Shown: piece by piece, positions 9,993-54,169 of the stretch
Numbering within the stretch: the first letter of the stretch is position 1
Layout: each line of letters opens with the position of its first letter
Position numbers and translations under genes: made by a program
IMG/VR virus record: IMGVR_UViG_3300020178_000002
Coordinates: 124,001 to 188,000 of that record
Reading direction: 5' to 3' (one strand)
Length of the DNA: 64,000 bases
Notes under the pieces: generated by a model
Databases searched by the model: none
What the model saw: the letters and a program-made list of their open reading frames with translations, nothing else
Told to the model about the DNA's origin: nothing

Positions 9993-9998
9993 GTAAGT

Positions 9999-24606: not shown

Positions 24607-25977
24607 ATGTCGCATGGTTGGTACAATAGTAGAAGTCCTTGGCCTCTACCACCTAAAAACACAGTAGCTGTTTCTCCTTTTAAAAAAGGAGAGATTGATG
24701 TCAGGTGGGATAACCCATCTCTCCTTCATGGTAACGAGGGCTGGATTATAAGAGGTGTAAATATATACCGCTCTAGTAACTCTGATAGAGGGATGTATCG
24801 GAGAGTTAATGTAGTTCCTGTTGGTGGTGGTCTATATAGAGATCAAATGCATACATGGACAGTACATGAAGAAGTGGTTGAGGGTTCTGCATGGATTAGT
24901 TTTGGAGATCAAGCAGAAGACCCTTATAGGTTTCAAACTAAGTTCCCTATAGCCAAACTTAATGGTGTGCATGAAGCAGGTGATTGCTCTAAAGATGTTG
25001 TAGTCACAATAGATGGAGAGGTAGTTCCTGTTTCTATGGTTCTTGGAGAGCTAAGACAAGTCATCTTGTATTATCTAGGTGTAGAGACTGACAATGCTAT
25101 TACTTTGAGAAAAGAAGCGAAGCTTGAGATAACAGAGAACTCTGTTGTTAAAGTAAGTTATCTTGCATATGACCCTAGCAGCAGGCTGGGTGTGGGTGTA
25201 GACAGAAGAGACTTCTATCGACTAACTACAGTTGCAGAAGATCCCCTAACAGGCAGACTTCACGAAACACCTTTAGATCAGTGTCAGCCTTTCTCAGATA
25301 GAGAGGTTGAAAAGATAGACTATATGTGGAGAGAAGGTATCCGAAGAAACAATTGGATATTAGAGCAAGGTGGTGAGAGAGTAAAGCTCTTTACTAGAAA
25401 GCAAGTAGGAGAGCCTTGTTTCTGTACTGCTTTCAACAGGGAAACCTTAGCTTACTCAAAGCAACCAGACAGTCTTTGCAAGATTTGTTTCGGTGTTGGT
25501 ATCAAGGGTGGCTATGAAGGTCCTTATGATATAATCATAGCTACAGATGAGACAGAGAAAAGAATTGTTCAGGAAGACAAGGGTCGGAGAAAAGAACACA
25601 GCTATGAGGTCTGGATAGGGCCTAGTCCTATTGTTTCTCAGAAAGACTTCATTGTTAAAGTGAACAATGACAGATACTCTATTGGTGCTGTGAGATACCC
25701 ATCTAACAGGGGTAATATTCTACAACAGCATTTTAACATAGCTTATTTAGACAGTGGAGACATTAGATATAACTTCCCTATAGAGGGAGTGCCTGTCTAT
25801 TGGGCAAAGACTCAATATGGCTATTGGCCTCAAAGAGATACTTACACAGCTCGTTCTGATGCAAAGTATCCTTTGGTTCAAGACACAGCTTACCCTACGG
25901 GGTCAAACAGACCAGATGTTGCTGACGCTTTGGAGAATAAAGGCAGGACAGCGACATGGGAAAATCAAAACTATTAG
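24607..25977 (+). CDS. Putative neck/head-closure protein with N-terminal FN3-like region
   Basis: IDVRWDNP...GVNIYRS and FYRLTTV (FN3-like); CFC...CKICFGVGIKGGY motif that I associate with large-myovirus neck proteins. Confidence 0.5.
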   Translation: MSHGWYNSRSPWPLPPKNTVAVSPFKKGEIDVRWDNPSLLHGNEGWIIRGVNIYRSSNSDRGMYRRVNVVPVGGGLYRDQMHTWTVHEEVVEGSAWISFGDQAEDPYRFQTKFPIAKLNGVHEAGDCSKDVVVTIDGEVVPVSMVLGELRQVILYYLGVETDNAITLRKEAKLEITENSVVKVSYLAYDPSSRLGVGVDRRDFYRLTTVAEDPLTGRLHETPLDQCQPFSDREVEKIDYMWREGIRRNNWILEQGGERVKLFTRKQVGEPCFCTAFNRETLAYSKQPDSLCKICFGVGIKGGYEGPYDIIIATDETEKRIVQEDKGRRKEHSYEVWIGPSPIVSQKDFIVKVNNDRYSIGAVRYPSNRGNILQQHFNIAYLDSGDIRYNFPIEGVPVYWAKTQYGYWPQRDTYTARSDAKYPLVQDTAYPTGSNRPDVADALENKGRTATWENQNY

Positions 25978-26799: not shown

Positions 26800-27230
26800 A
26801 AAGAACAGCACATGAAATAATTAGAAGTCTTGAACTTAGAGTAGCTAGACTTGAGAAGCAATCATCACATACAACATATAAGTTAAGTCCAGTTAGACCT
26901 GGACTTAAGAAGTACTTAGAAAATAAACTTAAGAGCATCCTTAGCGAAAGTGGCTATGGTGAAGATTCTTTTGAGGGGGTTGACAGAGTATTTCTTCAGT
27001 GGGATTTAGGAAATAGCTGGGGTGCAGATAACTACTTTGCAATTGGAGTAGACTCAGGTGCAGATACCTTTAGACTTATTTTGGATGATCATAAACCCAG
27101 TGACTTTGGAGATATAGATCCTTATGATGGAGATCCCAGAGGGCCTATTGATTGGACTCCTAAAAAAGTAAACCAAACTAAGCTAATGGATGCACTAGAA
27201 GAATACGATAATGATCTTTGGGAGATCTGA
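26796..27230 (+). CDS. Leader-tagged hypothetical protein
   Basis: Start moved to ATG 26796 (ATGA overlap); MKRTAHEIIRSLELRVARLEKQSS. Confidence 0.8.
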   Translation: MKRTAHEIIRSLELRVARLEKQSSHTTYKLSPVRPGLKKYLENKLKSILSESGYGEDSFEGVDRVFLQWDLGNSWGADNYFAIGVDSGADTFRLILDDHKPSDFGDIDPYDGDPRGPIDWTPKKVNQTKLMDALEEYDNDLWEI

Positions 27231-27790
27231 TGGTTTTTGATTTAAGAAAAGTTAAAAGAAAACCTGAGAGTAATCTTTTAAGTGACAAGAACAAATGGGA
27301 CTTGAGAACTTATAAGGTAAGACGAAATGTTTTTCCTAATGCAAAAGCTCTGGGTGAAAAAGGGATAGATAAAGAGATCATTAAGATCTTTGGGGAAGAG
27401 TTTGTTAAAGCTATTGTAGAAGAAGCAAAGAAAGCTTCTTCTAAAGGTGCGTCTATCCCTAAGTCAGAGGATTTTTATAACTCTTTCAGTTATGAGATAA
27501 CAAAGGGTGGGAAGATAAAGATACATAGCACATGGAAGTGGGTTAATAAGTACCTTCAAGCTAAGTCACCTTATGAGATGAACATCTATAGAAGAAGAGG
27601 TGAAAGCAAAGTAATTCCCTTAAGGACAAAAGATGGTGGTGTTGTTTTCAGGCAAGCACCTCTTATAGGTTCTAAAGGTTGGATTCACCCTGCAATCTTG
27701 AAATATAATTTCATTGAAGTAGGTCTCAAGAAAGGTGAGGAGAGAGCCATTCGAAGGGCTTTAACTTATATACAGACATCCAGATCTTAA
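27230..27790 (+). CDS. Basic protein, possible neck/tail-completion component
   Basis: Start moved to ATG 27230 (GGAG SD); C-terminal WIHPA...FIE pattern; morphogenesis context. Confidence 0.45.
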   Translation: MVFDLRKVKRKPESNLLSDKNKWDLRTYKVRRNVFPNAKALGEKGIDKEIIKIFGEEFVKAIVEEAKKASSKGASIPKSEDFYNSFSYEITKGGKIKIHSTWKWVNKYLQAKSPYEMNIYRRRGESKVIPLRTKDGGVVFRQAPLIGSKGWIHPAILKYNFIEVGLKKGEERAIRRALTYIQTSRS

Positions 27791-28947: not shown

Positions 28948-28950
28948 GAC

Positions 28951-30051
28951 ATGAATAAGGTATCAGCACAACAAATTAGATCTCTTGAGCTTAGGATAGC
29001 TAGGCTTGAAAAAGAGGCTGGCTTTATAGATGATATGGTAGGTGTCTTTAAAAAGACACTCAACATACCTAAGAATATGTTCTTAAAGATACTTTATGCC
29101 TTCAAAGAAGTTTATGATGATGTTGTTGTATGGAACACAGAATCAGAATCTAAGGCTATGGATTCATTAGGTGCATTATTGGGCATAAGAATATTTAGAT
29201 CTTTAGCTGGTGTTATAACTACAAGTGAGGGTTTACCTAAAATTGTCAAGTTCAACTACTCTGACCCTTTAAGCTCAACCTTCACAGGTGGACTTGCAAT
29301 GAAGTCTAATATCCCTCTTAAGAAGCTTATCAATATGTATGAGGGTGAGAACCAGACCAGAATGAAGAGAGCTTACACTTCATGGTATGCAGACTATAAA
29401 GAAATCATAAACCCTTCTGTCTCTGATAGAGAAGCGATTGATATTTTCTTAGATCTTTGTAAAAGAGGTGGGAAGTGGCTCTATCGCTTAATGACTGCCC
29501 TTATAGGTTTGGTTGGTATAGCGACTCTTAAGTCCACAGTCATATTCAACATCATTATTATGGTTGTACAGAGATATGTGCAGATAGGGATGTTTGATTT
29601 TCGAAATATGGATAAGAGAATTCTGGACTTCCAAGAAACAACAGTAAAGTATATAGACATAAAATCTGTTAAGTATCTTGAAGCAGAGGGTGTTATTGAA
29701 AACACTCACAAATTCATATCTGATGTTCTGGTTGGTGGGAGAGGGTATGTTCCTCGAAAAGAAGTAAAGGAATTTACTCTCGCTATTGTTGAAAAGCCCT
29801 TGCAGAAATACCAACCTATTGATTTTGTGTCTTGGAAAAAAGTTAGAGAGTACATGACACAAAACTACACTACCTTTATTGGTGTTTTCCTAACAGGATT
29901 CTTAGCTCTACTTGAGAAAGCACTTTATAAATGGGTCTTTAAAACAGAAGACTATGAAAAGATGAAAGCTGAAAGTGATGCAATGGGCAAGACAGCTTCT
30001 AAATACCCTGCAATTGCTTATATGGCTAGAAAGCTAGAAAGCTATTTATGA
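28951..30051 (+). CDS. Leader-tagged hydrophobic paralog 2
   Basis: Same leader; STFTGG; KTASKYP tail. Confidence 0.85.
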   Translation: MNKVSAQQIRSLELRIARLEKEAGFIDDMVGVFKKTLNIPKNMFLKILYAFKEVYDDVVVWNTESESKAMDSLGALLGIRIFRSLAGVITTSEGLPKIVKFNYSDPLSSTFTGGLAMKSNIPLKKLINMYEGENQTRMKRAYTSWYADYKEIINPSVSDREAIDIFLDLCKRGGKWLYRLMTALIGLVGIATLKSTVIFNIIIMVVQRYVQIGMFDFRNMDKRILDFQETTVKYIDIKSVKYLEAEGVIENTHKFISDVLVGGRGYVPRKEVKEFTLAIVEKPLQKYQPIDFVSWKKVREYMTQNYTTFIGVFLTGFLALLEKALYKWVFKTEDYEKMKAESDAMGKTASKYPAIAYMARKLESYL

Positions 30052-30632
30052 TATACTCGCTTCAATGTACCTACTCAAATGGCATAAGAATAAACTCTTT
30101 AAATATATCACTTGCTAATGGACAGTCTTTCGATTGCCCAAAGCAAACATATGATACTAATAAAGAAATCCAAGCTCTGGTGTCCTCTGGTATGTTGAAG
30201 CTAAAAGTAAAAGAACACAAGTCTGGCCTTAGAGCGAACTCTAATAAACGAGTTTTACGAAGCAACCCGACTAATGAGAGAGTTGTAGAGAGAGTTGTAG
30301 AGAGAGTTGTTGAATCCCCAATAGACATGGATGCAATCACTAGGAATGTAGTTGAGCAAATAGGTGCTGTACTATCTCCTGAGATATTGGCTCAAGCAAT
30401 TGCAGCACAACTCCCTACTGTCCAAGCTAATTACCCACAGAAAAATGAGGGTAATAGTTCTTTTATGTCTTCTAGTGAAGACAATCTAATGTTTATCCCC
30501 TCTACTATTGTAGATAGAAATACTGTTGCTTCTAAATCCTCTGCCTCTGAAAGCATATCGGAAGACTCTGATGGTCTTGCTGATGCTATGGCTGCTTTAA
30601 AAGCAATGAAAAAGAAGAAAGGTCAAACCTAA
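30048..30632 (+). CDS. Hypothetical protein with ERVV x3 repeat
   Basis: 194 aa, overlapping both neighbours; 12-bp coding repeat GAGAGAGTTGTA. Confidence 0.75.
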   Translation: MIYSLQCTYSNGIRINSLNISLANGQSFDCPKQTYDTNKEIQALVSSGMLKLKVKEHKSGLRANSNKRVLRSNPTNERVVERVVERVVESPIDMDAITRNVVEQIGAVLSPEILAQAIAAQLPTVQANYPQKNEGNSSFMSSSEDNLMFIPSTIVDRNTVASKSSASESISEDSDGLADAMAALKAMKKKKGQT

Positions 30633-31564
30633 TGAATAAAGTATCTGCACAGCAAATCAGATCTCTTGAAATGAGAATTGCCAGACTCGAAAGAGAGGCT
30701 GGTCTTAAAGAAATCTTTGATGACATCTCTGGATTTGTTAAAGGTGTTGTTAACATTCCTAAAAACTTCATCAAGAAAATCATCAATGTTTTCAAAGATG
30801 TTGGAAACAACCTAACTGTCCTTCTTTCAAAACAAGAAGATAGGATTGTTAGAGCCCTTAAATCTGCATTGGGAATCCGAGTAGCTGCGACTCTTGAAGG
30901 CTTTGTTATAGATACTAGAGATCTTCCTATCATTGTAGACTTTAATCTTATGAATCCTATTAAGTCTACTTTCACAGGTGGCAATGCAGGATCTTCAAAA
31001 GTATCTTTGGACAAGTTGGCATCTCTCTATGATGGAGAAGAAGCTAGAAGAATTAAGTCAGCTTTCCTTTCATGGAAATCAGACTACCTTCCTTCTTTAA
31101 ATGCATTACAAGGAAAAGATGATGTTGGAGTTATTAAGGGCTTTCTAAAACTGATACAAAGGTCATCTAAACTGCTTTACAGATTCTTGAAGATTGCTCT
31201 AAGCATATTCAGCATTGCCCAGCTTATTGCAGCACCTTGGGGATCTTGGGTTTTAGGTTTAGCTATGGTCTTCATAGGGAATCATAATATGTTGCCTATA
31301 TCAGCCGACTATACTCTTCTAACAGATAAGAGTCTAGCTAATATTATGGATGCCAAAGACTTCTTACCTCGTAATGAAGTTCCATTGTTGAAATCTTTTG
31401 GTCCTGCTATTATCACTACTGTTCTTAAGATTCTTGAAAAAGCATTCTATCGCTATGGTGTTAATGTTGATGCCTTTGACGAGGAATCTATGGGTAGAAC
31501 AGCTTCTCAATTCCCAAGAGTTGCTTCTGTAACTAGAAGACTCGAACACTACGCTTACGCTTAA
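30632..31564 (+). CDS. Leader-tagged hydrophobic paralog 3
   Basis: Same leader; STFTGG; RTASQFPRVAS tail. Confidence 0.85.
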   Translation: MNKVSAQQIRSLEMRIARLEREAGLKEIFDDISGFVKGVVNIPKNFIKKIINVFKDVGNNLTVLLSKQEDRIVRALKSALGIRVAATLEGFVIDTRDLPIIVDFNLMNPIKSTFTGGNAGSSKVSLDKLASLYDGEEARRIKSAFLSWKSDYLPSLNALQGKDDVGVIKGFLKLIQRSSKLLYRFLKIALSIFSIAQLIAAPWGSWVLGLAMVFIGNHNMLPISADYTLLTDKSLANIMDAKDFLPRNEVPLLKSFGPAIITTVLKILEKAFYRYGVNVDAFDEESMGRTASQFPRVASVTRRLEHYAYA

Positions 31565-31615
31565 TATCTTATTTATCATTAGCTTCCTGTGAAAAAAACA
31601 CAGGGGGCTGATGAT

Positions 31616-31747
31616 ATGACAAGATACCAGATGAAAAGATTAGAGATGAGGATTTCCAGAAAACTCGAAAGGAAGTCCAAACTTCAACTTCAGCGTATCT
31701 ATCAGAGATTAGCTTCTTTAGAAAAAGAGGTTAAATCCAATGAATAA
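31616..31747 (+). CDS. 43-aa peptide made of two leader-like motifs (not in the ORF track)
   Basis: MTRYQMKRLEMRISRKLERKSKLQLQRIYQRLASLEKEVKSNE; AGGGGG SD; own TA-N5-TTTAT motif. Confidence 0.65.
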   Translation: MTRYQMKRLEMRISRKLERKSKLQLQRIYQRLASLEKEVKSNE

Positions 31748-32669
31748 AGTATCTGCACAGCAAATCAGATCTCTTGAAATGAGAATAGCTAGACTTGAAA
31801 GAGAAGCTAGCTTTCAAGATGTTTTGGATGACATCAGTGGTTTTGTTAAAGGTGTTGTTAATATCCCTAAGAACTTTATTAAAAACATCATCAATGTTTT
31901 GAAGGATGTAGGTAACAACCTTAAAGCAACTTTTGCTGAACAGCGTGAAGTTATTTGTGAAGCCCTAGAGTCTGCATTGGGAATCCGAGTAGCTGCTACT
32001 CTACAAAACTTTATTGTAGATACCAGAGACATGCCTGTTATCGTTGAGCTCAATGTAATGAACCCAATCAAGTCGATATTCACAGGTGGTAAAGCTGGTT
32101 CTTCAAAGTATGCTCTTGATAAGCTGGCATCTCTTTATGACCGTGAAAGGTCTAAAAGAATCAAGTCTGCATACCTCTCTTGGAAGTCAGACTACTCTTC
32201 TCAAATAGATATTCTTCAAGGAAAATTTGATGAGTCTAACTCTGTTAAAAGATTAATGAAGTTTCTTCAAAGAAGCTCTAAGGTTGCTTATAGATTTTTC
32301 AAAGTTCTTTTCAGCATAGTCTCTATGACAGAGGTTATTGCAGCACCTTGGGGCTCTTGGATTATTGACCTAGCAACAATTACAGTAGGGTCACTTGATC
32401 TAATACCATTTTTACCAAAAGAGTCATGGACTCTTAGTAAAGTTGAAAGTATCACTGGTTTATCTTTCACTACCAATACCCTGAGTAAAAGTGTGGTCAA
32501 GACAATCCCTGCTACAATAGTCACCTCTGTTCTTAAGCTTCTTGAAAAAGCATTCTATCGCTATGGTGTTAATGTTGACGCTTTTGACGAGGAATCTATG
32601 GGTAGAACAGCTTCTCAATTCCCAAGAGTTGCTTCTATAACTAGAAGACTTGAAAACTATATCCTTTAG
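31740..32669 (+). CDS. Leader-tagged hydrophobic paralog 4
   Basis: Same leader; close paralog of 30632..31564 with a near-identical 3' end. Confidence 0.85.
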   Translation: MNKVSAQQIRSLEMRIARLEREASFQDVLDDISGFVKGVVNIPKNFIKNIINVLKDVGNNLKATFAEQREVICEALESALGIRVAATLQNFIVDTRDMPVIVELNVMNPIKSIFTGGKAGSSKYALDKLASLYDRERSKRIKSAYLSWKSDYSSQIDILQGKFDESNSVKRLMKFLQRSSKVAYRFFKVLFSIVSMTEVIAAPWGSWIIDLATITVGSLDLIPFLPKESWTLSKVESITGLSFTTNTLSKSVVKTIPATIVTSVLKLLEKAFYRYGVNVDAFDEESMGRTASQFPRVASITRRLENYIL

Positions 32670-32683
32670 AAAGGCTCGAAAGA

Positions 32684-33091
32684 ATGAATAAAGTATCTGC
32701 ACAGCAAATCAGATCTCTTGAAATGAGAATAGCTAGACTCGAAAGAGAGGCTGGTCTTATAGACCATTTCTATAAATCTCCATACAAAGAAAAACTAAGC
32801 CCTGAAGATATAATAAAAGGCTTTATTAAAGTTTTTAATCGTGCTTGTAGACATGGAAGTGTTATGTCTATCTACTCAGACCCATATGAAAATGATTTCA
32901 TCCTTACCTTGAGACTTAACATCGGGATTGTAAAAATAAAAGTTTCTATAGATGGGGAATTGATAGAGGTCTATAAAAATGATGGTGCTGTATACACAAG
33001 GCTTATGGCATCTTTTGAATACAAAGATATTAAAAAGGGAATGGTCAAGGTTGTTAAAGCCCTTGAAGCTAAATCTATTTACTATGTATAA
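32684..33091 (+). CDS. Leader-tagged hypothetical protein with unrelated body
   Basis: Identical MNKVSAQQIRSLEMRIARLEREAG leader, then no visible similarity to paralogs 1-4. Confidence 0.8.
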   Translation: MNKVSAQQIRSLEMRIARLEREAGLIDHFYKSPYKEKLSPEDIIKGFIKVFNRACRHGSVMSIYSDPYENDFILTLRLNIGIVKIKVSIDGELIEVYKNDGAVYTRLMASFEYKDIKKGMVKVVKALEAKSIYYV

Positions 33092-33151
33092 AGCTTTTAT
33101 TGTTTAGAGGTATAATAATAACAAACCCCTAAAGAATAAGGAGACTCTATC

Positions 33152-34144
33152 ATGAGTAAAGGTGTAGGATTAGATATTGGAACTATGAACCTTGTTTCAT
33201 CAAGAATGAATAAGAAAGAAGTTTCAATCAGAAGAATGAGAGACTTGTTTATTGACCTGCCTGCTTCTGCAAAGAAAATGCTTAAGTTAGGTTCGGTTTC
33301 ATATATTGAGTCTGACGAGCATTTATTGGTTCTTGGCGATGAAGCTATGGAAGTTGCAAATATGTTCGGCAGAGAGGGTCGTAGACCCCTTAAAGCAGGT
33401 CTTGTCTCTCCAGACGAGATTGACTCCCTCACAGTTCTTGGTCACATGGTTAAAGATGTGCTTGGAGAGCCTTCACATGAGGGTGAGCATTGCTACTTCT
33501 CTATCCCAGCAGCACCTGTTGATGTTCAAATGGATGTTGTTTACCACAAGGGAGTATTTACTCGCATTGTTCAAGAATGTGGATATACCCCTCACCCAGC
33601 AAATGAAGCTATGGCTATTGTATTTGCAGAGACAGCTAAAGAGGGCTTCTCAGGCATTGGCATTAGTTTTGGTTCAGGTATGACCAACATTGCTCTTGCA
33701 ATTAACACCATTGAGGGTCTCAGCTTCTCAGTTGCTAGAGGTGGGGATTGGATTGACCAAGGTGCTGCAAGATCAGTTGGTGGTACAGCCTCTAAGATGT
33801 GTGCTGTCAAAGAGAAAGGCATTGACCTTAATGCACCTAAGAATAGAGAAGAAGAAGCAATCTCCTTTTACTATAAGGCTTTGATTGAACATGCTCTTGA
33901 TAACATTGCTCAACAGTTTGTAATGAAGGGTGGACACCTTACTCTCAACAAGCCTATTCCAATTGTAGTAGGTGGTGGAACAAGTCTAGCTGGTGGGTTC
34001 ATGGATTTCTTTAGAGAGGTCTTTGAAACTAAGCGTAAGCGTTTCCCTATCGAGATCTCTGAGGTACGTCATGCTTCTGACCCATTCCATGCAGTTAGCA
34101 AGGGTATGTTAGTTCTTGCCCAACAAGAGTATGACGAGGATTGA
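33152..34144 (+). CDS. Actin-fold (MreB/FtsA/ParM superfamily) ATPase
   Basis: Phosphate-1 GLDIGTMN, connect NEAMA, phosphate-2 GISFGSGMTNI, adenosine VVGGGTSL; AAGGAG SD. Confidence 0.85.
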   Translation: MSKGVGLDIGTMNLVSSRMNKKEVSIRRMRDLFIDLPASAKKMLKLGSVSYIESDEHLLVLGDEAMEVANMFGREGRRPLKAGLVSPDEIDSLTVLGHMVKDVLGEPSHEGEHCYFSIPAAPVDVQMDVVYHKGVFTRIVQECGYTPHPANEAMAIVFAETAKEGFSGIGISFGSGMTNIALAINTIEGLSFSVARGGDWIDQGAARSVGGTASKMCAVKEKGIDLNAPKNREEEAISFYYKALIEHALDNIAQQFVMKGGHLTLNKPIPIVVGGGTSLAGGFMDFFREVFETKRKRFPIEISEVRHASDPFHAVSKGMLVLAQQEYDED

Positions 34145-34150
34145 TTAAAC

Positions 34151-34196
34151 AAAAAAAGAAGCCCCACTCCCCAATTAAGGGAAGCAGGGCTTCTTT
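34151..34196. terminator. Bidirectional terminator between convergent genes
   Basis: A7-GAAGCCC..TCCC / GGGA..GGGCTTC-TTT. Confidence 0.75.
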
Positions 34197-34229: not shown

Positions 34230-34523
34230 TTAGATAAGTTCAATGCCTTCAGAATCATATATATGATGACCCATTCTCTCGGAGAGAAGATGAAGAAGTA
34301 CCTTATCTGCTGGTAATGTTATAGTTTCAGAGTCACCATTTGAAAAATGGACTTTTCGGTTTCTTGAGTCAAACTCTATGAAACCGATATTACTTCCATC
34401 ATGGGAATCTTTTTCAACATGTCTTTGAAGTAAGTCAAAGTTGATCTTTACCGCAGCTTCTTTTTCGAGTCTAGCGATTCTCATTTCTAGTTCAGAAATA
34501 ATTTTTTGAGCTGATTTGTTCAT
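34230..34523 (-). CDS. Leader-tagged small hypothetical protein
   Basis: MNKSAQKIISELEMRIARLEKEAA; AAGGAG SD; TA-N5-TTTAT at 34562-34575 on the minus strand. Confidence 0.8.
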   Translation of the reverse strand: MNKSAQKIISELEMRIARLEKEAAVKINFDLLQRHVEKDSHDGSNIGFIEFDSRNRKVHFSNGDSETITLPADKVLLHLLSERMGHHIYDSEGIELI

Positions 34524-34577
34524 CAGTATCTCCTTATTGTTTGTTATGTTATGTAGTTTATATAAATAGATTATTAA

Positions 34578-35516
34578 TTAGAAGTTGAAGATACAATCCT
34601 CAGGAAGTTTATCTTCTCTCCAACGCTCTAAGATAGGGTGACGAATAGCACCTGTCGGGTACTGTCCATACCCTTTAATTTCAGCAACACGACCTACGAA
34701 CTTTTCCATTTGGTCTCGAGGTCCTGTCTCTCCAAGAGAACCTACAACACGAAGATTGCCTTCTTTGTCATAGAATCCATAGTTGAGTCCTACATAACCT
34801 TTTGACCAAGGATCTGTGTGAAGACCCTCTGGGTAGAGTTTGCCATCAGTGCCAACCTCTCCAGGTCGGACTCTCCACTCGCTTGGCTTTGCATTAGCGT
34901 CTACAATCACAACGTCATAGTTGTCAGTAAACTTTAACTTAGCCCAAGAAGAACGGCTATTTGCTTTGTAAGGTGCGTTCACATCTTTTAGCATAATACC
35001 CTCATGTCCTCGCTCTAAAGCGATTTGCATGAGATCCTCAGTGTTATTCTCTCCCATGCTGTAAATCTCTGAAAGACAAAGATTTGAGAATGAAGAATCG
35101 AAAACACTTTCAAGGATAGCTCTACGCTCTTTCCATGAGAGGTCTCCTACATATTGTCCGTTGTGATAAACAATATCGAAAGCTGAAAAAACAAGGCTCT
35201 CTGGAGACTCGGCTCTAAGGTTGGAAACTCGGTCAGAACCCTCTGCACCTTCTCTGGGGATAATCTCTCCATCAAGAAGTGTTCCTGCTGGAACTTCTGC
35301 TTGAGCATGACTTAGACACTTAATGTCTTTTCCGATTCGTGACCATGCCACGTTATTTGAAATAAGACATCGGTGTCCATCGAGCTTCATTTCAGCAATG
35401 TAGTCTGATGACCCATTAACTTTATCCACCAACTTTTCTTTTGCAGTCTTCGCAAGTTGGGGGCGAAGAAACTTATAAACACCACAAGGTGAACTTACAT
35501 CAATTTTCTTTGGCAT
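34578..35516 (-). CDS. lig: ATP-dependent DNA ligase
   Basis: Motif I EMKLDGHR (KxDG), III LDGEI, IIIa FDIV, IV EGIMLK, V KLK, and OB-fold IRHP...WREDK. Confidence 0.92.
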   Translation of the reverse strand: MPKKIDVSSPCGVYKFLRPQLAKTAKEKLVDKVNGSSDYIAEMKLDGHRCLISNNVAWSRIGKDIKCLSHAQAEVPAGTLLDGEIIPREGAEGSDRVSNLRAESPESLVFSAFDIVYHNGQYVGDLSWKERRAILESVFDSSFSNLCLSEIYSMGENNTEDLMQIALERGHEGIMLKDVNAPYKANSRSSWAKLKFTDNYDVVIVDANAKPSEWRVRPGEVGTDGKLYPEGLHTDPWSKGYVGLNYGFYDKEGNLRVVGSLGETGPRDQMEKFVGRVAEIKGYGQYPTGAIRHPILERWREDKLPEDCIFNF

Positions 35517-35552
35517 ATCTGATTTCCTTTTCTATCTGTTTGTTAATATTAC

Positions 35553-35574
35553 TTATCAAATAGATAGGTGGGGG
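35553..35574 (-). promoter_or_regulatory. CCCCC-N9-TTTGATAA promoter-like motif upstream of the ligase
   Basis: Reverse complement reads CCCCC-ACCTATCTA-TTTGATAA. Confidence 0.65.
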
Positions 35575-35583
35575 TCAGATATA

Positions 35584-36393
35584 TTAGATGTAAGGAACAG
35601 ATTTTGGTCTCTTGTCTACAATGCGATATTCGTTACCGAATTTATCTTTAACATAGAGACTTTTTAAGTCACTAGAAACTCTAAGCTTTCTCTTGTATTT
35701 CTTCATAGTTTCTACATTAATGAGTTCTACACTTTGATTCCTTTTGTAGTACTTATTAATCATGTAGACATTTGGGTGACTATCGCTTACAAGGAAAGCT
35801 CCTATGATGCCAATGCTTGTGTATTTACTATCTTTGAATCCCTCAAGCTGCTCAGGTGTAACATTTTTATTCTTATTTGCACGAACACCACTCATGTCAG
35901 TATTCATAAATATAGCATCTTTAAAACTATTATTAATAATAGTAGATCTTTCTAGGCTTGCCTCTCGAAAAGAGACTCCATTCAAATTATTATGCATAAA
36001 ACTTGAGTTGTCTAGTGAAGCAATGTTGAAATATGCCCCTGTAAGATTACTTTCGTCAAAGGTAGACCTCTGAAGGTCACAGCCCGAGAACTCTGCATAT
36101 ATAGCTTTACATTTGAAAAGATGAACATTACCTTTGCTTAATTGTAACTGTGTAGTTAGCATTGTGCAATTTATAAATTTGGTATCTTTAAAACTACATC
36201 GCCCTAAGTTTGCACCACTAAGGATACAATTTTTAAAAGTAGTGCCATGAAGTTTTGTCTCTGAAAGATTTGCACTTGTGAAATCCACACCTGTGAATGT
36301 CTTATTAGAGAGATCTATTTCTTCAAGACTTGCGTGTTGTAAGTTCTTATTTCCAGCCATTAGTTGGTCTACAGAAAATTGATGTGCTGACAT
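35584..36393 (-). CDS. Pentapeptide-repeat protein
   Basis: A[DN][LF]xx periodicity (ASLEE IDLSN...VDFTS ANLSE...ANLGR...SNLTG AYFNI ASLDN). Confidence 0.9.
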   Translation of the reverse strand: MSAHQFSVDQLMAGNKNLQHASLEEIDLSNKTFTGVDFTSANLSETKLHGTTFKNCILSGANLGRCSFKDTKFINCTMLTTQLQLSKGNVHLFKCKAIYAEFSGCDLQRSTFDESNLTGAYFNIASLDNSSFMHNNLNGVSFREASLERSTIINNSFKDAIFMNTDMSGVRANKNKNVTPEQLEGFKDSKYTSIGIIGAFLVSDSHPNVYMINKYYKRNQSVELINVETMKKYKRKLRVSSDLKSLYVKDKFGNEYRIVDKRPKSVPYI

Positions 36394-36459
36394 TTTTCAT
36401 TTCCTTTGTCTGTTTTGTATAGTGGGTAATAGATAGGTTATAAAATAGAGGTGTTCTTC

Positions 36460-36921
36460 ATGTGGAAAACAGGGTCTAACAGGAAAGTTATTTTCTCAGA
36501 CATACTTTCCTTTATAAGCAATTCTCTAAAGTACGAGAGCAGAGTAGTAGTAGGTACAGATAGCCAGCCTCACAGAGAAGGCTCTCTTTTCGTAACTGCC
36601 ATTACAGTAATGTCGGTTTCGGTAGACTATGATTGTAGATACTTCTACCTCAAACACCCACCAAAAGTAGCTCATGGTTTATTTGACAGATTGTTTAGTG
36701 AGACACAACACTCTTTAGATATTGCTTCTGAAATAAGAGAGAGCATACCCTCAGTGAGTATTGAGATTCACTTAGATATAAGTCCATCTGATTCCAAAAG
36801 CAGAACTTCTCAATATGCAAACTCTCTTGTATCTCTGGTTCATGGTTATGGTTATAATCAGGTTAAAGTTAAACCAGAGGCATGGTGTGCTAGTGCCATA
36901 GCAGATTTCCACTCTAAATAG
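36460..36921 (+). CDS. Ribonuclease H-like YkuK family protein
   Basis: VGTDSQ, RLFSETQHS, EIHLDI, KPEAWCASAIAD. Confidence 0.8.
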   Translation: MWKTGSNRKVIFSDILSFISNSLKYESRVVVGTDSQPHREGSLFVTAITVMSVSVDYDCRYFYLKHPPKVAHGLFDRLFSETQHSLDIASEIRESIPSVSIEIHLDISPSDSKSRTSQYANSLVSLVHGYGYNQVKVKPEAWCASAIADFHSK

Positions 36922-36960
36922 TCTAGGATTCATATAAGTCCTCTTAAAAGGAGACTTATA

Positions 36961-37332
36961 TTGAAATACACCGAAATAAAAAATGGCCTTAGAGTGCTTA
37001 CTGTGGATGCTATTGGGATAATCAATGAAGCAAAGTTCCAGGCTGAAGAAGAAAAGGCAATAGAAGTAGTTGTAGCTGCTTTAGAAGAAGCAGGGTTCAA
37101 AAAGAAAGATGAGTCCCAACCAGATCGTGTTTTGATTATGGTACATAATTCAGAAAGCTTCCCTATTGAGATTTACTTTTTCTTGCCAGCATACACAGGA
37201 GGTTTTGTTCTTCAAAGTGGCTGGGAGATTATAGGTTGGCATAATAATAGTCAAAGCATAAATGAGATGAAGAACATCTTCAGCCATATAAGATCTTGCT
37301 GGAAGCAACAGTTTAAGAAGGATTCTTTATAA
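36961..37332 (+). CDS. Dispersed member of the YTExVNGKR...IRxxW family
   Basis: YTEIKNGLRV, ALEEAGF, IRSCWK; AAGGAG SD. Confidence 0.75.
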   Translation: MKYTEIKNGLRVLTVDAIGIINEAKFQAEEEKAIEVVVAALEEAGFKKKDESQPDRVLIMVHNSESFPIEIYFFLPAYTGGFVLQSGWEIIGWHNNSQSINEMKNIFSHIRSCWKQQFKKDSL

Positions 37333-37681
37333 ACACATAGTGAAGATATACAGAGGACAGCAAGTAATAGCTTTCACTCTTATGTCTTTTAGACTTTGCT
37401 TTTGTTAAGAAGCCATCTGGGTCAAGTTCTAAAAACTTATACTTCTTTGCTATTCTCTTAAAAGTAGATACCATTCTTCTAATGACAGCTTTTCTTTCTG
37501 GAGTCGCAAGATAGCCATCAAAAGTAGTAAAGGTCTTAGAGGTTTCAAAAGCAAAGGGTCTGATTGAGATGCTGTATAAAACACCCTCTTCACGAATTCT
37601 TTCCAGCTTGAAAGTCACTTGTACTTTGTACTTTAAAGAAGATTTAAGCTCTTCTATGAACTCTTGAAGATAGTCTTCCAT
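37313..37681 (-). CDS. Hypothetical protein
   Basis: 122-aa ORF in a minus-strand operon. Confidence 0.7.
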   Translation of the reverse strand: MEDYLQEFIEELKSSLKYKVQVTFKLERIREEGVLYSISIRPFAFETSKTFTTFDGYLATPERKAVIRRMVSTFKRIAKKYKFLELDPDGFLTKAKSKRHKSESYYLLSSVYLHYVFIKNPS

Positions 37682-37684
37682 ACT

Positions 37685-38044
37685 TTATCTCCATGCAGTG
37701 CAGATTGTCTTGTAGGATTGTGCTTGTCGCTGTTGCTGTCTCTGTTGTTCCTGCTGCTGTTGTTCCTGTGGATGAGGTAAACGATAAGGAACTTTTACCT
37801 CATCTGGGTAAAGCGACAGCACATCTAGTTGCTCTGTTTTGAAATCTTTCTTGACCACCTTCTTAAACCTTAGATGGCACATAGGGTCTGGATCATAAAC
37901 TTCCACGAGAGTGTATGGCATTGCATGCCCACCACATTGTGGCAGGTGTCCACAGTGGGAGTGTTCTGGTCTGAATACATACTCAGGCAAAAGGTAAGTA
38001 CAAGAAGATAGTAGAGTAAAAAGCAAGATGTGTATCAGTCTCAT
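37685..38044 (-). CDS. Putative lipoprotein with Gln-rich stretch
   Basis: MRLIHILLFTLLSSC lipobox; HSHCGHLPQC; poly-Q region. Confidence 0.65.
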   Translation of the reverse strand: MRLIHILLFTLLSSCTYLLPEYVFRPEHSHCGHLPQCGGHAMPYTLVEVYDPDPMCHLRFKKVVKKDFKTEQLDVLSLYPDEVKVPYRLPHPQEQQQQEQQRQQQRQAQSYKTICTAWR

Positions 38045-38047
38045 ATT

Positions 38048-39163
38048 TTAGCCTTCCCACTCATCAAATTCCATGATGTCAACTTCAAGTTTTTCTATGG
38101 GTGTAAATTTTAGTTTAATCTTACCGAGAATCTTCTCAAGCTCATTTTGTGTATTTGCTCTGACTCTAGCTCTATTTGGTTTTAAGAACTCAACAGTGAT
38201 TCTATCTCCTGTACCCCATTCAAGAGTTCTGTCTCTACCAGCCATTTCTGTGACTCTAAAGAAAGCAAAGCCTGGTTTATCCTCATCATTTATAACAAGA
38301 GGATCACCATATTGGGTATCTAAGTAAACTTTGTAGCCCATATCTTTTAGTTTGTTATAAACATCTTCTGCTTTAGGTACATTTGTCTCATCATAGATAG
38401 CAAGTCCAAGACCTAGAACTTCGCTTATAAAGTATGCCAGATCCCAATTATCACTTGAGAACTTCATCTTTGGGTGGAAGATGTTTGTGATCACAGGTGT
38501 TGTTCCAACATGCTTTAGCTTCCTATCAATACCTAGATTTTCAAAGTTCCAATCTCGGTCATTCTTATTTTCATGGAATCCTTCAATTAGCTCTAACTTA
38601 TCTTCTAAAGTCTTCCCAGATGAGTTAATGGCTTTAGAAACTTCTCGAGTGTCTCGATCTCTCATGTCTTTAGAGATATCAACAACGACCTCTTTCAAAT
38701 CTTCCATGTCATTAACATCAACTTCACTCTCAAGCATTTCCTTGATTCTGTTTTTAACATTTGATGAAAGGGGGGTGTTTGCAGCCTTCATGTTCTCAAG
38801 TCTTGCAATCCTATTGCTTAACTCTTGAATCTTACTTTGTGAAGATAGACTTGAAACTCTCAGTTTGAGGTATTTCTTAAGAGTCATACCAGGCTCTTCT
38901 TGCCTAGAAGATAAAGAAAGTGGGAATTGATATGAGGGCAGGAAGCCTGACTTGAACTGTCCTGTATATAAACCACCTTCACCATCTATGTGTAAGACTA
39001 CTCTTTTAGTATATCCACTTTCTGAAGAAACTTCCAAATCCTGTGTGAGGTAAGGGTGGTCTTTATCTACACTTGGTCTACCCACAGGTTTTACAAAGTA
39101 CCCTGATGTTTCAAGGTGGTTGTTTAATGACATGATTGCAGGTACAAGATATTTCGTGATCAT
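38048..39163 (-). CDS. Two-part protein with an internal leader-like motif
   Basis: Internal SKIQELSNRIARLENMKAA at about residue 110-130. Confidence 0.75.
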   Translation of the reverse strand: MITKYLVPAIMSLNNHLETSGYFVKPVGRPSVDKDHPYLTQDLEVSSESGYTKRVVLHIDGEGGLYTGQFKSGFLPSYQFPLSLSSRQEEPGMTLKKYLKLRVSSLSSQSKIQELSNRIARLENMKAANTPLSSNVKNRIKEMLESEVDVNDMEDLKEVVVDISKDMRDRDTREVSKAINSSGKTLEDKLELIEGFHENKNDRDWNFENLGIDRKLKHVGTTPVITNIFHPKMKFSSDNWDLAYFISEVLGLGLAIYDETNVPKAEDVYNKLKDMGYKVYLDTQYGDPLVINDEDKPGFAFFRVTEMAGRDRTLEWGTGDRITVEFLKPNRARVRANTQNELEKILGKIKLKFTPIEKLEVDIMEFDEWEG

Positions 39164-39292
39164 AATTTCTTCCTTATCTTTTTATTTTAAAGACTCTAAC
39201 CATAAATAAGATACAAATCCTAGTTATTAGCACTCTTTCCTTATCCTATAGTTTATTTATTGTATAAGATAAGAAAAAAATAGGAGAAGAAA

Positions 39293-40195
39293 ATGAAAGT
39301 CAACTTCAAAGGAAGAGAGGTCTCTCTAACAACCGTTGAAAACTACGCTTCAGACAAGAGACATCCCGACCACAAAGACGCAGTTTCGTTCTTAAAGAAG
39401 AGTGAGAACGAAAAAAAGCCCTCACAGCAGAAGAAGCAGGTTGGATTCGACAACTACAAAAGACAGGGTGTTTCCGAATTGAGAGACCCTAAGAAGCTCC
39501 AAGAAATAGAGAGCCTCGCAAAGAAGCTAAAAGTGAAGCCAAATGCAGACGATGCTCATATGTCAGAAAGTTTGGTGCGTTCTGAAGGAGTTTTCAACGA
39601 CTACTCTTTGCAAAATGCAGGGGCTGAGAAGATATTTGAACCAGAGATGGAGGGAGAACTTCAAGATCTCCTTTATCCTGATGAAGCCCAAGTACATGAC
39701 TATGATGTGTACCACTTCGGAAAGATCAAAGTCCCCACTTTAAAAGAGCTTGAGTCTGCATATGAGGCAGATCTAGAAGCTGGTAAGTACGACAATGTTT
39801 ATGAAAAAGACCACGAAGCGGTGATCAAATATGTTAGGAAGAATTTTGAAGACATTAAAGCAGCCTTCGAGAAACAAAACCAAATTCGTGAGTTAAGGCA
39901 GCAGATCGAATCTGAAAAGAATGATGTACAAGAACGAGCCGAGACAAGATCAGACCAGCTAAAGAAGTTGATCGAGGTTTCTGAAAGCCTTGAAGACCTA
40001 AAGATGTTTGAGGATGAGATAGTAGAGTTGTCAAAGACTTATCTGGAAGGCGAGTCTCTTCTATCAGACAAGTCACTTGAAAAAACATTCAAGAAAAAGA
40101 GGAAAGGTCTTAAAAAGAATGCCTCTTTGAAGATAGCTTCCTATGTTCTCTCTCATATTAAAGAAGAGATAAAGAGCCTTAAGACCACCTTGTAA
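39293..40195 (+). CDS. Charged helical protein, probable head-internal protein
   Basis: K/E-rich; C-terminal KNASLKIAS tail; TA-N5-TTTAT upstream. Confidence 0.6.
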   Translation: MKVNFKGREVSLTTVENYASDKRHPDHKDAVSFLKKSENEKKPSQQKKQVGFDNYKRQGVSELRDPKKLQEIESLAKKLKVKPNADDAHMSESLVRSEGVFNDYSLQNAGAEKIFEPEMEGELQDLLYPDEAQVHDYDVYHFGKIKVPTLKELESAYEADLEAGKYDNVYEKDHEAVIKYVRKNFEDIKAAFEKQNQIRELRQQIESEKNDVQERAETRSDQLKKLIEVSESLEDLKMFEDEIVELSKTYLEGESLLSDKSLEKTFKKKRKGLKKNASLKIASYVLSHIKEEIKSLKTTL

Positions 40196-40270: not shown

Positions 40271-41374
40271 ATGTTTCATCATTTAACAATGGCCGTAAGA
40301 GATAGGATGATTAAAGAGTTAAAGACATACTGGCAAGATCACCCTAGATATGAAACCCTTGCTAAAAACATACAGGGGAAATATGCTTTTGATGAAAGGC
40401 CACAGTTTGGAATGGTAGTTAAAACTTCTGGAGCAAGCAATGTGGTATTGAGCCCAGATAACTTTATAGGTCACATAAAAGGCTTTACTACTCTTGCAAA
40501 AGTTAAGGGTAAAAAGAGTGTCTCTATTGAGTGGGTCAAGGAAGACAGAAACACAAAAGCTCAAGAGGGTATCTACCACATACAAGTACAAAAAGACTCT
40601 ATGGTTGAAGATCCTAATGCATATCTTTTTGTGATTCAAAGATATGTTTCACGAAAAGAGTCTGCACCTTTGTTTACAGATCCAAGCACAATAGAACTAA
40701 ACTATGTTCCTTTTGCTGACTCTTTAAGAATAAGAGAAGCCCCTTCTGGGAGGGTTTTAGGGGCTTCTGAGTATGCTATTAATGGTTCTACTATTACATT
40801 ACTAGAAGAAGTGCAAAGAGGCTTATCTTTAAGTGTGGAGTATACTAGCAAAGATGATTTCTTAGAAGGCCCTTTCAGTGTTTGTCCAGACCATGTTTAC
40901 AGGAACATCATTCCAGGCATAATGATTTCAGTAGGCAGGTGGATAGAAGCAGGGGATGAGCAGATAATAGTTGTGACAGAAAACTTAGAGCTTATTGCAA
41001 GAGAATATGGTGGCAGGTGGGATATAAGTGTAGACATAGACTTAGTTGCAAGAGATGTTCATTCTCAGGCAGACATATCTGATAGAACTGTTGTTTGGCT
41101 TTGGTCAACTTTAAGACCGAAGCTTGCTAATATGGGTCTTGAGATGTCGGATGTGAGTTTGGGTGGCGAGGGTGAAGAAGTATATGATGAGAATGGTGAT
41201 GATTACTTCTACACCGCTAGTATAAGCTTAAGCATACAAGCGGATTGGTTTATTCATTTCCCAGTTCTTATACCTATTAGAGGGGGTGCTGTGGACAGCA
41301 TTGCAGTAGAACAAATAGACTCACCTGTTGTTGGACTTGGGAACACCAACAGCTTCATTCAGAGGTTGATGTAA
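40271..41374 (+). CDS. Putative tail terminator/completion-like structural protein
   Basis: Just upstream of the sheath; C-terminal ISVDIDLVARD...YFYTASISLSIQADW pattern; AAGGAGG SD. Confidence 0.45.
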   Translation: MFHHLTMAVRDRMIKELKTYWQDHPRYETLAKNIQGKYAFDERPQFGMVVKTSGASNVVLSPDNFIGHIKGFTTLAKVKGKKSVSIEWVKEDRNTKAQEGIYHIQVQKDSMVEDPNAYLFVIQRYVSRKESAPLFTDPSTIELNYVPFADSLRIREAPSGRVLGASEYAINGSTITLLEEVQRGLSLSVEYTSKDDFLEGPFSVCPDHVYRNIIPGIMISVGRWIEAGDEQIIVVTENLELIAREYGGRWDISVDIDLVARDVHSQADISDRTVVWLWSTLRPKLANMGLEMSDVSLGGEGEEVYDENGDDYFYTASISLSIQADWFIHFPVLIPIRGGAVDSIAVEQIDSPVVGLGNTNSFIQRLM

Positions 41375-41647: not shown

Positions 41648-41747
41648 ACCACTCTCCTTTGATTCATTTCTTTAACATACCATAGGGCTATCAATAGTTT
41701 ATTTATCTTATCACTACATAAGTGAACATCTTATAAGCTGGGTGGTT

Positions 41748-42182
41748 ATGCCAATACTAAAGTTTCAATGTCAATCTTGTGGTCTACTTCAAAGAAAAAG
41801 AGTTCCTACACAGAAAGAGTCTATAGACTGTTCATGTGGAGAGAAAGCTTTTTTAGAAGGAAGTACACCTAATTCTTCCGTTGGGTTTTCTGCTGATGTG
41901 GAAGGCACAATGAGGGTACAGACTTCAGGTATTGAATCTTTTGACCTAAACTTTGATAGAGTCATAGGCGAAGAATCGAAGCAAAGATGGGATACTATTT
42001 ATCAAAGAAGAAAAGATAAGTGGGACATAATCCATAGCAATGAAGGCACTAACGGCTATGACATCATGAGACTACCTGACGGACATTATGAGTCCTTGCC
42101 TAAGCAAGCTAAGATGTTCCGAGATGCCCGTGAGGAAAATATGAGCAAACTTAAATCTCAAAATAAATCAGTGAAGGAGTAG
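41748..42182 (+). CDS. FmdB-like zinc-ribbon protein
   Basis: MPILKFQCQSCG...CSCG. Confidence 0.7.
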   Translation: MPILKFQCQSCGLLQRKRVPTQKESIDCSCGEKAFLEGSTPNSSVGFSADVEGTMRVQTSGIESFDLNFDRVIGEESKQRWDTIYQRRKDKWDIIHSNEGTNGYDIMRLPDGHYESLPKQAKMFRDAREENMSKLKSQNKSVKE

Positions 42183-52743: not shown

Positions 52744-52744
52744 G

Positions 52745-54133: not shown

Positions 54134-54169
54134 AGTCTTGCCCTCTACGATATGAAAGGACTATGCCTT

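What the first reader, a model, noticed from the sequence alone, without database searches (positions are those of the whole stretch)
33152..34144. Phage-encoded actin-fold ATPase inside the morphogenesis region
Seen: a complete set of actin-superfamily motifs, with phosphate-2 reading SFGSG instead of DxGxG. Upstream lie both TA-N5-TTTAT (33089-33100) and TATAAT (33111). Established: jumbo phage cytoskeletons are best known as tubulin (PhuZ); actin-like proteins are described in few phages (e.g. AlpC of prophage CGP3). Inference: a filament for positioning DNA or capsids. The low-complexity 30048..30632 protein could be an adaptor, but that is speculative.
Basis: partly seen in the sequence, partly recalled or inferred. 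Interest (0 to 1): 0.6.

Follow-up and report, generated by a model that had tools for sequence, protein, structure and literature searches.

The report
Volactin-type actin gene in huge phage
A complete 312-kb salt-marsh phage carries a very conserved gene for an actin-like protein of the recently named volactin family; all 14 related phage loci with sequence upstream pair it with one small partner gene beside the tail genes, so these huge phages probably build their own actin-type filament in the infected cell.

Summary
The ORF at 33152..34144 (+) is real and encodes a 330-aa actin-fold protein. It matches Pfam PF25216 (Volactin) over its full length (E 5e-74). It models confidently (pLDDT 89), and its best structural matches are the filament formers MamK, MreB and BeeR. 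In a tree it falls inside a well-supported Volactin family, apart from E. coli MreB, FtsA and DnaK, in a phage-only clade.

The odd phosphate-2 motif (Ser in place of Asp) is a signature of the whole family, not a defect of this gene.

The window comes from a complete 312-kb virus record. In related huge-phage contigs the actin gene sits just upstream of a tail-terminator-like gene and a giant tail-sheath gene. It is the best-conserved gene of that block (56-65% identity against 26-48%).

In most relatives the two genes overlap or nearly touch.

TA-N5-TTTAT is a real genome-wide promoter-like motif, though this gene's copy is a weak one.

Filament formation and partner binding were not shown; the one co-folding test gave no verdict. 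I found no paper describing this family in phages. Best reading: an actin filament plus adaptor, made with the structural genes.

The parts
33152..34144 (+). Volactin-family actin homologue, 330 aa
   Evidence: Pfam PF25216 E 5e-74. AF2 pLDDT 89, pTM 0.87. Foldseek: MamK filament TM 0.74, BeeR 0.73, MreB 0.66-0.68. Phage clade supported 98/99 inside the Volactin family, itself 99/99.
33138..33143 (+). Shine-Dalgarno AAGGAG, 8 nt before the ATG
   Evidence: Read from the sequence.
33089..33100 (+). TA-N5-TTTAT promoter-like motif (weak copy), 63 nt upstream of the start
   Evidence: The motif is enriched in intergenic DNA and at a fixed position genome-wide.
33111..33116 (+). TATAAT hexamer without a scored -35 partner
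34155..34196 (.). 18-bp G+C-rich hairpin between convergent genes; terminator-like
   Evidence: An RNA-library contig of a relative ends at 34165.
30048..30632 (+). Partner gene X (194 aa): folded N-domain 1-55, basic linker, disordered middle, conserved F-I-P motif (149-151), acidic stretch, C-terminal amphipathic basic helix (175-192)
   Evidence: Orthologues lie directly upstream of the actin gene in 14 related loci. hhalign of close against distant groups: probability 98.6%, E 9e-16. AF2 model. No Pfam or PDB relative.
30632..33091 (+). Insertion between X and the actin gene: three paralogues with a shared N-terminal leader, plus one small ORF
   Evidence: Absent at this place in most relatives.
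27218..27790 (+). Conserved 190-aa gene of the syntenic block, upstream of X in relatives
   Evidence: 26-52% identity in 15 loci.
24607..25977 (+). Conserved 456-aa gene of the syntenic block, function unknown
   Evidence: 41-48% identity in distant relatives. No Pfam or PHROG match.
34230..40195 (.). Second insertion, between the actin gene and the tail genes: leader paralogue, DNA ligase, pentapeptide-repeat protein, RNaseH-like protein and others
40271..41374 (+). 367-aa gene, directly downstream of the actin gene in relatives; tail/neck-terminator-like (a lead only)
   Evidence: 35-42% identity in relatives. ESM Atlas neighbours carry SP10_terminator and Phage_tail_terminator_9.
41742..42182 (+). 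Conserved 146-aa gene just before the sheath gene; its L004 orthologue has a weak Zn-ribbon (Zn_ribbon_8) Pfam hit
   Evidence: No Pfam match for the window copy itself.
42187..46998 (+). Giant tail-sheath protein, 1603 aa
   Evidence: phrog_2839 tail sheath E 3.5e-30. Orthologues of 1640-1780 aa in relatives.

Best explanation
The gene encodes a phage-specific branch of the volactin family of actin homologues. Most likely it binds ATP and polymerises into filaments in the infected cell. It probably works as a two-gene module with protein X (30048..30632). X's conserved C-terminal F-I-P motif and amphipathic basic helix would dock on the filament. X's folded N-domain and basic linker would hold a cargo or an anchor: DNA, membrane or a virion part. 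The module is ancestrally the first unit of the tail-gene block and carries the same promoter-like motif as the structural genes. I therefore infer that it is made late and organises virion assembly or positioning. Shown here: family membership, fold, conservation, synteny, gene coupling, and presence in RNA libraries. Inferred: polymerisation, X binding, timing, and cargo.
For: Family and fold. The founding member, volactin, forms dynamic filaments in vivo (PMC10869688). The nucleotide-site residues D8, G10, T11, E152 and G275-S278 are nearly or fully invariant across 31 phage copies. The gene is the most conserved of its block, 56-65% identity against 26-48% for its neighbours, as expected for a polymer whose surfaces are constrained. 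X-actin gene pair: the two genes overlap by 4-8 nt in 7 loci and are 9 nt or less apart in 4 more. X orthology: E 9e-16. Conserved short motifs in an otherwise disordered X recall adaptor tails such as that of ParR (the ParR comparison is my own knowledge). Tail-block position. The motif is shared with structural-gene heads. Contigs 100% identical to the gene occur in a salt-marsh metatranscriptome library, and relatives occur in marine ones. Close copies were found in only 4 of about 186,000 species genomes, all on small phage-like contigs.
Against: There is no direct evidence of filaments. The three-copy co-fold scored 0.17, under the mark of 0.42, which is no verdict. X binding was not tested. 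No centromere-like repeat array lies next to the module (the intergenic DNA there is under 90 nt). Late timing rests only on a motif whose copy here is weak. RNA-library contigs can include DNA and cannot show transcript starts or levels. In this phage, X and the actin gene are separated by 2.5 kb of inserted genes. Ser in place of the phosphate-2 Asp might slow hydrolysis; its effect is unknown.
Confidence: 0.55

Rival explanations
1. It is a non-polymerising actin-fold ATPase that acts as an assembly chaperone for the giant sheath or tail (Hsp70-like logic), with X as a co-chaperone.
For: It sits at the head of the tail block. Hsp70 homologues are the commonest viral proteins of this fold in BFVD. 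Self-association got no support (which is not evidence either way).
Against: It lies inside the Volactin family and well apart from DnaK. Filament formers give the best structural matches; EutJ and the BiP NBD have lower TM scores, 0.52-0.55. It has no substrate-binding domain: 330 aa is the bare actin core.
Confidence: 0.15
2. It is a filament that takes over host cell shape or division, for example enlarging the cell for huge virions, in the way volactin acts on shape in Haloferax. It would not move phage parts.
For: Volactin is a cell-shape factor. Chromosomal bacterial homologues exist: 22 of 301 sampled genomes of one phylum, one on a 2.29-Mb contig. A phage copy could therefore interact with or replace a host system.
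Against: The phage clade is deep, monophyletic and only about 36% identical to the cellular copies, so it is not a recent host pick-up. It has its own conserved partner, which was not found beside the cellular copies. It lies among structural genes, not early genes.
Confidence: 0.15
3. It is a ParM/AlpC-type DNA segregation or replication-positioning motor for the phage genome, for example during a carrier or plasmid-prophage state, with X as the DNA-binding adaptor.
For: The gene order, adaptor followed by actin, resembles alpA-alpC of prophage CGP3 (PMC4446434). X has a strongly basic linker after its N-domain in all orthologues.
Against: No iteron array lies near the module. X shows no RHH or other DNA-binding fold: best Z 4.6, no Pfam. 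The genome has direct terminal repeats, and the module sits in the tail block.
Confidence: 0.12

Closest known systems
Volactin (VolA, HVO_2015) of Haloferax volcanii; Pfam PF25216
   Same: Same Pfam family, matched over the full length. Same clade in the tree. Same motif set in the archaeal relatives read, including S-F-G-x-G-M-T-N and G-G-D-W-I-D.
   Different: Only 34-40% identical to archaeal members. Encoded by a huge phage. It has a dedicated upstream partner X and lies in a tail-gene block. Volactin is a chromosomal cell-shape factor.
AlpC/AlpA of Corynebacterium glutamicum prophage CGP3
   Same: A phage-encoded actin-like protein with an adjacent small partner gene (PMC4446434).
   Different: A different actin family: no cultured phage in the 50,697-record phage collection matched this protein. 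AlpA binds DNA and supports replication. Here the context is tail genes, and no DNA site was found. I did not compare the sequences directly.
ParM/ParR and Alp7A/Alp7R plasmid systems
   Same: An actin-like ATPase plus a small adaptor whose flexible C-terminal tail docks on the filament. The architecture of X is compatible with this (my knowledge of ParR).
   Different: The partner lies upstream, not downstream. There is no centromere array. ParM was not among the top 50 structural matches. No StbA/ParM Pfam hit.
MamK, MreB and BeeR bacterial actins
   Same: The closest solved folds: TM 0.74, 0.66-0.68 and 0.73.
   Different: 14-19% identity. No MreB_Mbl Pfam hit. E. coli MreB lies outside the family in the tree.
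PhuZ tubulin spindle of nucleus-forming jumbo phages
   Same: A cytoskeletal polymer encoded by a very large phage (PMC8314001).
   Different: Tubulin fold, not actin. No PF00091 match in this genome or in five relatives. That Pfam model may miss divergent PhuZ.

Membership tests
Volactin family (Pfam PF25216) | Full-length match to the family profile above the curated cut-off | tested here: met
   250 bits against a cut-off of 35, positions 3-321 of 321; the same from the genome search.
Volactin family (Pfam PF25216) | Monophyly with archaeal members to the exclusion of other actin-fold families | tested here: met
   The 30-row family is supported 99/99 against E. coli MreB, FtsA and the DnaK NBD. 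ParM, MamK and Alp7A were not in the tree, because no sequences were available to me.
Volactin family (Pfam PF25216) | Family motif set: D-x-G-T-M-N, N-E, S-(F/V)-G-x-G-(M/L)-T-N, G-G-D-W-I-D, G-G-(T/S)-(S/A) | tested here: met
Volactin family (Pfam PF25216) | Forms dynamic filaments in cells | not testable with these tools
   Known only for HVO_2015 (PMC10869688). The co-fold of three copies gave no verdict.
Actin/ASKHA superfamily | Two RNaseH-like lobes with phosphate-1, connect-1, phosphate-2, adenosine and connect-2 motifs | tested here: met
   AF2 model pLDDT 89. At least 500 PDB matches at E 0.001 or better; all of the 50 listed rows are actin-fold proteins or complexes containing one. 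Motifs. The phosphate-2 Asp is replaced by Ser.
Type II (ParM/Alp) partition or positioning systems | Adjacent adaptor gene that co-occurs with the actin-like gene | tested here: met
   X lies directly upstream in 14 related loci. Physical binding was not tested.
Type II (ParM/Alp) partition or positioning systems | Centromere-like repeat array next to the operon | tested here: not met
   TRF found no array beside the module. The intergenic spaces there are under 90 nt.
Type II (ParM/Alp) partition or positioning systems | Adaptor with a DNA-binding fold (RHH or HTH) | tested here: inconclusive
   The X N-domain is confidently folded but has no clear structural relative: best Foldseek E 0.17, VIA Z 4.6. 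It has a basic linker.
MreB | Match to the MreB_Mbl profile; mreCD neighbours | tested here: not met
   No PF06723 hit at E 1 or better. The neighbours are phage genes.
FtsA | Match to the FtsA profile with the 1C domain | tested here: not met
   PF14450 E 0.059, 14 bits against a cut-off of 31.8. PDB FtsA E 0.62.

The most novel reading that the evidence does not exclude
A third, virus-only branch of the volactin actin family, together with its own adaptor protein X, forms an actin-based cytoskeleton that a widespread clade of huge phages uses to organise tail or virion assembly. This would be an actin counterpart of the PhuZ tubulin spindle. X's terminal helix would dock on the filament as ParR or WH2 peptides do.
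Probability: 0.3. Interest if true: 0.8.

Novelty: new variant of a known kind. Interest (0 to 1): 0.62.

Why it matters
Phage cytoskeletons are known mainly as PhuZ tubulin in nucleus-forming jumbo phages. Phage actins are known from a few temperate or Bacillus phages.

This gene represents a large environmental clade. The word search found 2065 related protein clusters, on contigs up to 473 kb, from salt-marsh, marine and other samples.

In that clade an actin homologue of a family characterised so far in one archaeon is a core gene. It is the best-conserved gene of its neighbourhood and is tied to a dedicated partner and to the tail genes.

If it polymerises, huge phages have recruited both major cytoskeletal folds. 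That would offer a tractable pair of proteins for studying how a minimal actin and one adaptor organise a virus factory. It would also give the little-studied volactin family, including its bacterial chromosomal branch, a second experimental entry point.

Tried and rejected
- Co-folding three copies of the actin scored 0.17 and 0.02 against a mark of 0.42. This is no verdict and is not evidence either way.
- PHROGs and NCBIfam gave nothing for the actin. A sequence search of the PDB gave nothing significant.
- The first genome-contig scan, with the single protein, found none.
- X has no Pfam match, no significant Foldseek match and no clear VIA match, best Z 4.6.
- I looked for shared neighbours around the cellular bacterial and archaeal homologues. 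None is shared with the phage, and none is conserved among the bacterial loci.
- I looked for a centromere-like array with TRF. None lies next to the module.
- BFVD holds no close viral structure. The nearest are phage G gp506 and viral Hsp70s at 10-16% identity.
- There is no tubulin-family match in this genome or in five relatives. This is a weak negative, because PhuZ is divergent.
- The idea of a recent capture from a host is rejected: the phage clade is deep and only about 36% identical to any cellular copy.
- The idea that the actin is packaged through the shared N-terminal leader is rejected: it lacks that leader.
- I did not run the large all-against-all protein search, because the family scan had already settled identity.
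- I could not name the bacterial genomes behind the G handles, and I could not read HVO_2015 itself.

Full report
**What is there.** The ORF at 33152..34144 (+) is intact. It is 330 aa long and is preceded by AAGGAG 8 nt upstream of the ATG. An 18-bp G+C-rich hairpin at 34155-34196 follows it and separates it from a convergent gene.

The protein matches Pfam PF25216 (Volactin) from end to end: E 5.2e-74, 250 bits, cut-off 35. The only other Pfam hit is a sub-threshold one to FtsA. PHROGs, NCBIfam and a sequence search of the PDB gave nothing useful.

An AlphaFold2 model built on 31 homologues is confident (pLDDT 89, pTM 0.87). Its best solved-structure matches are filament-forming actins: the MamK filament (TM 0.74), BeeR (0.73), MreB (0.66-0.68), crenactin and actin. 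EutJ and the Hsp70 nucleotide-binding domains give lower TM scores.

**Whose gene it is.** The window is positions 124001-188000 of a 312,136-bp IMG/VR virus record. That record has direct terminal repeats and is rated 100% complete. Its G+C content is 38.4%, and it carries six tRNA genes near one end.

The window also holds:
- a 1603-aa tail-sheath gene (phrog_2839, E 3.5e-30);
- a prohead-protease-like gene;
- a weak capsid-family hit;
- a type IB topoisomerase, a helicase and an ATP-dependent DNA ligase.

Near-identical DNA occurs in salt-marsh metagenomes, and relatives occur in marine and seawater metagenomes.

**Relatives.** The word-based protein search found 2065 related clusters. The top 120 all carry PF25216, are 61-98% identical, and come from contigs up to 473 kb. 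Two uncultured huge phages in GenBank hold copies: LR745208 (485 kb, 62.5% identity) and LR756511 (595 kb, 31%). No cultured phage matched.

Among one genome for each of about 186,000 prokaryote species, close copies (59-65%) occur in only four MAGs of unrelated taxa. All four sit on 9-29 kb contigs, and three of the four also carry the giant sheath gene, so I read them as mis-binned phage DNA.

More distant cellular members do exist:
- 22 of 301 sampled genomes of one bacterial phylum, one of them on a 2.29-Mb contig;
- 30 of 301 genomes of one archaeal phylum;
- haloarchaeal megaplasmids.

All of these are 34-40% identical to the phage protein.

A maximum-likelihood tree (LG+C20) places all 30 family rows together (99/99) against E. 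coli MreB, FtsA and the DnaK nucleotide-binding domain. Inside the family there are three clades: a bacterial one (97/100), an archaeal one (82/89, which attracts the long LR756511 branch), and a phage one of 13 rows that contains the window protein (98/99). I had no ParM, MamK or Alp sequences to add to the tree.

**The odd motif.** But every family member I read has Ser there:
- all 31 phage copies (S172 invariant);
- six bacterial copies and ten archaeal copies;
- nineteen further archaeal copies.

It is therefore a family signature, not a lesion. A machine-read copy of the volactin paper's motif table prints Asp for HVO_2015. That table visibly drops residues in every row, and I could not read HVO_2015 itself, so this one point stays open. 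The other nucleotide-site residues are conserved: D8, G10, T11, E152 and G-G-T-S.

**Context.** I compared the window's ORFs with 16 related loci. The ancestral gene order is: a 456-aa gene, a 190-aa gene, X, the actin gene, a 367-aa gene, a 146-aa gene whose L004 orthologue has a weak Zn-ribbon hit, then the giant sheath gene.

The actin is the best-conserved member of this block, at 56-65% identity against 26-48% for the others. That fits a protein whose whole surface is constrained. The 367-aa protein resembles tail/neck terminators according to the ESM Atlas; this is a lead only.

In this phage two insertions have split the block:
- 27847-33091, except X itself, consists of paralogues that share an N-terminal leader.
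- 34230-40195 brings the ligase, a pentapeptide-repeat protein, an RNaseH-like protein and others.

"Inside the morphogenesis region" is therefore correct, and more so ancestrally than today.

**The partner.** In all 14 related loci with upstream sequence, the gene directly upstream of the actin gene encodes a 190-240-aa protein of the same build.
- In seven loci its stop overlaps the actin start by 4-8 nt.
- In four more loci the gap is 1-9 nt.
- Only in the window and in locus L018 have leader paralogues been inserted between the two genes.

A profile-profile comparison of the close and distant groups gives 98.6% probability and E 9e-16 over the full length.

The protein has these parts:
- a confidently folded N-domain, residues 1-55, pLDDT about 94;
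- a strongly basic linker;
- a variable disordered middle;
- a conserved F-I-P motif (I and P invariant, F nearly so);
- an acidic Ser-rich stretch;
- a C-terminal amphipathic helix ending in Lys/Arg, pattern L-x-D-A-x-x-A-L-K-x-x-R-K.

It has no Pfam family and no clear structural relative. Short conserved peptides in a disordered tail are how ParR-type adaptors, and WH2 motifs in eukaryotes, engage actin-like filaments. That comparison is my own knowledge and a resemblance, not a test. A terminal amphipathic basic helix could equally be a membrane anchor.

**Regulation and expression.** TA-N5-TTTAT is a real signal. Of 144 genomic hits, 64 fall in the 8% of the genome that is intergenic, and 57 sit upstream of same-strand starts, mostly at 40-60 nt. 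The extended consensus is TTnTTAA-TAnTnTnTTTAT-A.

The motif heads the terminator-like gene, the 146-aa gene before the sheath gene, the gene after the sheath, and 10 of the 26 leader-bearing genes. It does not head the ligase, pentapeptide or topoisomerase genes in this window. The actin gene's copy lies at 63 nt and fits the flanks poorly, so assigning it to this promoter class is tentative.

Contigs 100% identical to 33094-33622 and 33670-34033 occur in a salt-marsh metatranscriptome library. Contigs of 90-97%-identical relatives occur in two marine RNA runs from one sample. These are assembled contigs. They show presence in RNA libraries, but not transcript starts, strand or level.

**How it most likely works.** I commit to a filament-plus-adaptor module, made with the structural genes, that organises assembly or positioning in the infected cell (confidence 0.55). 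Shown: family membership, fold, conservation, synteny and gene coupling. Inferred: polymerisation, X binding, timing and cargo.

The rivals are:
- a non-polymerising chaperone for the giant tail (0.15);
- a host-shape takeover filament (0.15);
- a ParM/AlpC-type DNA positioning system (0.12). It is weakened by the lack of any repeat array beside the module and of a recognisable DNA-binding fold in X.

The single co-folding job, three copies of the actin, gave no verdict.

**Known or new.** Volactin was described in 2024 as a dynamic filament that influences cell shape in Haloferax volcanii (PMC10869688). Phage actin-like proteins are known from prophage CGP3 (AlpC, PMC4446434), from Bacillus pumilus phages, and as an mreB-like ORF in phage 0305phi8-36.

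The huge-phage survey paper mentions tubulin but not actin. Full-text searches for volactin, for actin-like proteins in jumbo or huge phages, and for phage-encoded actin homologues found no paper linking this family to phages. BFVD holds no close viral structure. No tubulin-family gene was found in this genome or in five relatives.

I rate it a new variant of a known kind. It is a phage actin, but of a different family, core to a huge-phage clade, with its own partner and a tail-gene setting.

Noticed in passing
window 26784, 27847, 28951, 30632, 31740, 32684 (+) and 34230-34523 (-); at least 26 ORFs genome-wide: A shared N-terminal leader (about 25 aa, core L-E-x-R-I/V-A-x-L-E-K-E/Q-A/S) heads many otherwise unrelated proteins. 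It also occurs in related phages. It resembles a capsid-targeting or propeptide signal, such as that of the T4 internal proteins, and a prohead-protease-like gene lies at 52592-54133. The actin lacks the leader.
   Followed up: partly
whole genome; e.g. window 23047, 27791, 39249, 40218, 41695, 46999: A promoter-like motif, TTnTTAA-TAnTnTnTTTAT-A, lies 40-60 nt upstream of 57 of 328 ORF starts, including the heads of tail genes.
   Followed up: yes
window 185..9208 (-): A single 3007-aa ORF; not analysed.
   Followed up: no
window 42187..46998 (+): The tail-sheath protein is about 1600 aa, and only its last 330 residues or so match a sheath profile. Orthologues of 1640-1780 aa occur in all relatives whose loci reach that far, so a giant sheath marks this phage clade.
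   Followed up: partly
window 60900..62267 (+): Eukaryotic-type DNA topoisomerase IB catalytic core (PF01028, E 3.6e-17) in a phage genome.
   Followed up: no
window 34578..36921: An inserted cassette between the actin gene and the tail genes: ATP-dependent DNA ligase, a pentapeptide-repeat protein and a PF04308 RNaseH-like protein.
   Followed up: no
window 54152..55819 (+): A highly acidic protein with tandem repeats, lying between the protease-like gene and a weak capsid-family hit (56564..57442); scaffold-like.
   Followed up: no
loci L045-L048, L035, L036 (G014, G054, G138, G082, G194, G190): A chromosomal bacterial branch of the Volactin family is present in 22 of 301 sampled genomes of one phylum, one copy on a 2.29-Mb contig. 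It has no conserved neighbours. I found no study of it.
   Followed up: partly
loci L025-L028: Four MAGs labelled Thermoplasmata, Actinomycetota, Legionellales and 'uncultured bacterium' carry phage-clade actin genes on 9-29 kb contigs. Three of the four also carry the giant sheath gene. This is probably phage DNA binned into cellular genomes.
   Followed up: partly
L023 (LR756511.1) 9759-9989 and 9998-11017: The distant 595-kb phage copy (31% identity) is preceded by a 76-aa ORF. It has a W-A-I-P-E-F stretch and a basic C-terminus, so it may be a minimal analogue of X.
   Followed up: no
PMC10869688, Supplementary Fig. 8b (machine-read): The table prints Asp in phosphate-2 of HVO_2015, and its 'phosphate-1' segment looks shifted by about 10 residues. 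All 29 archaeal family members read here have Ser.
   Followed up: partly
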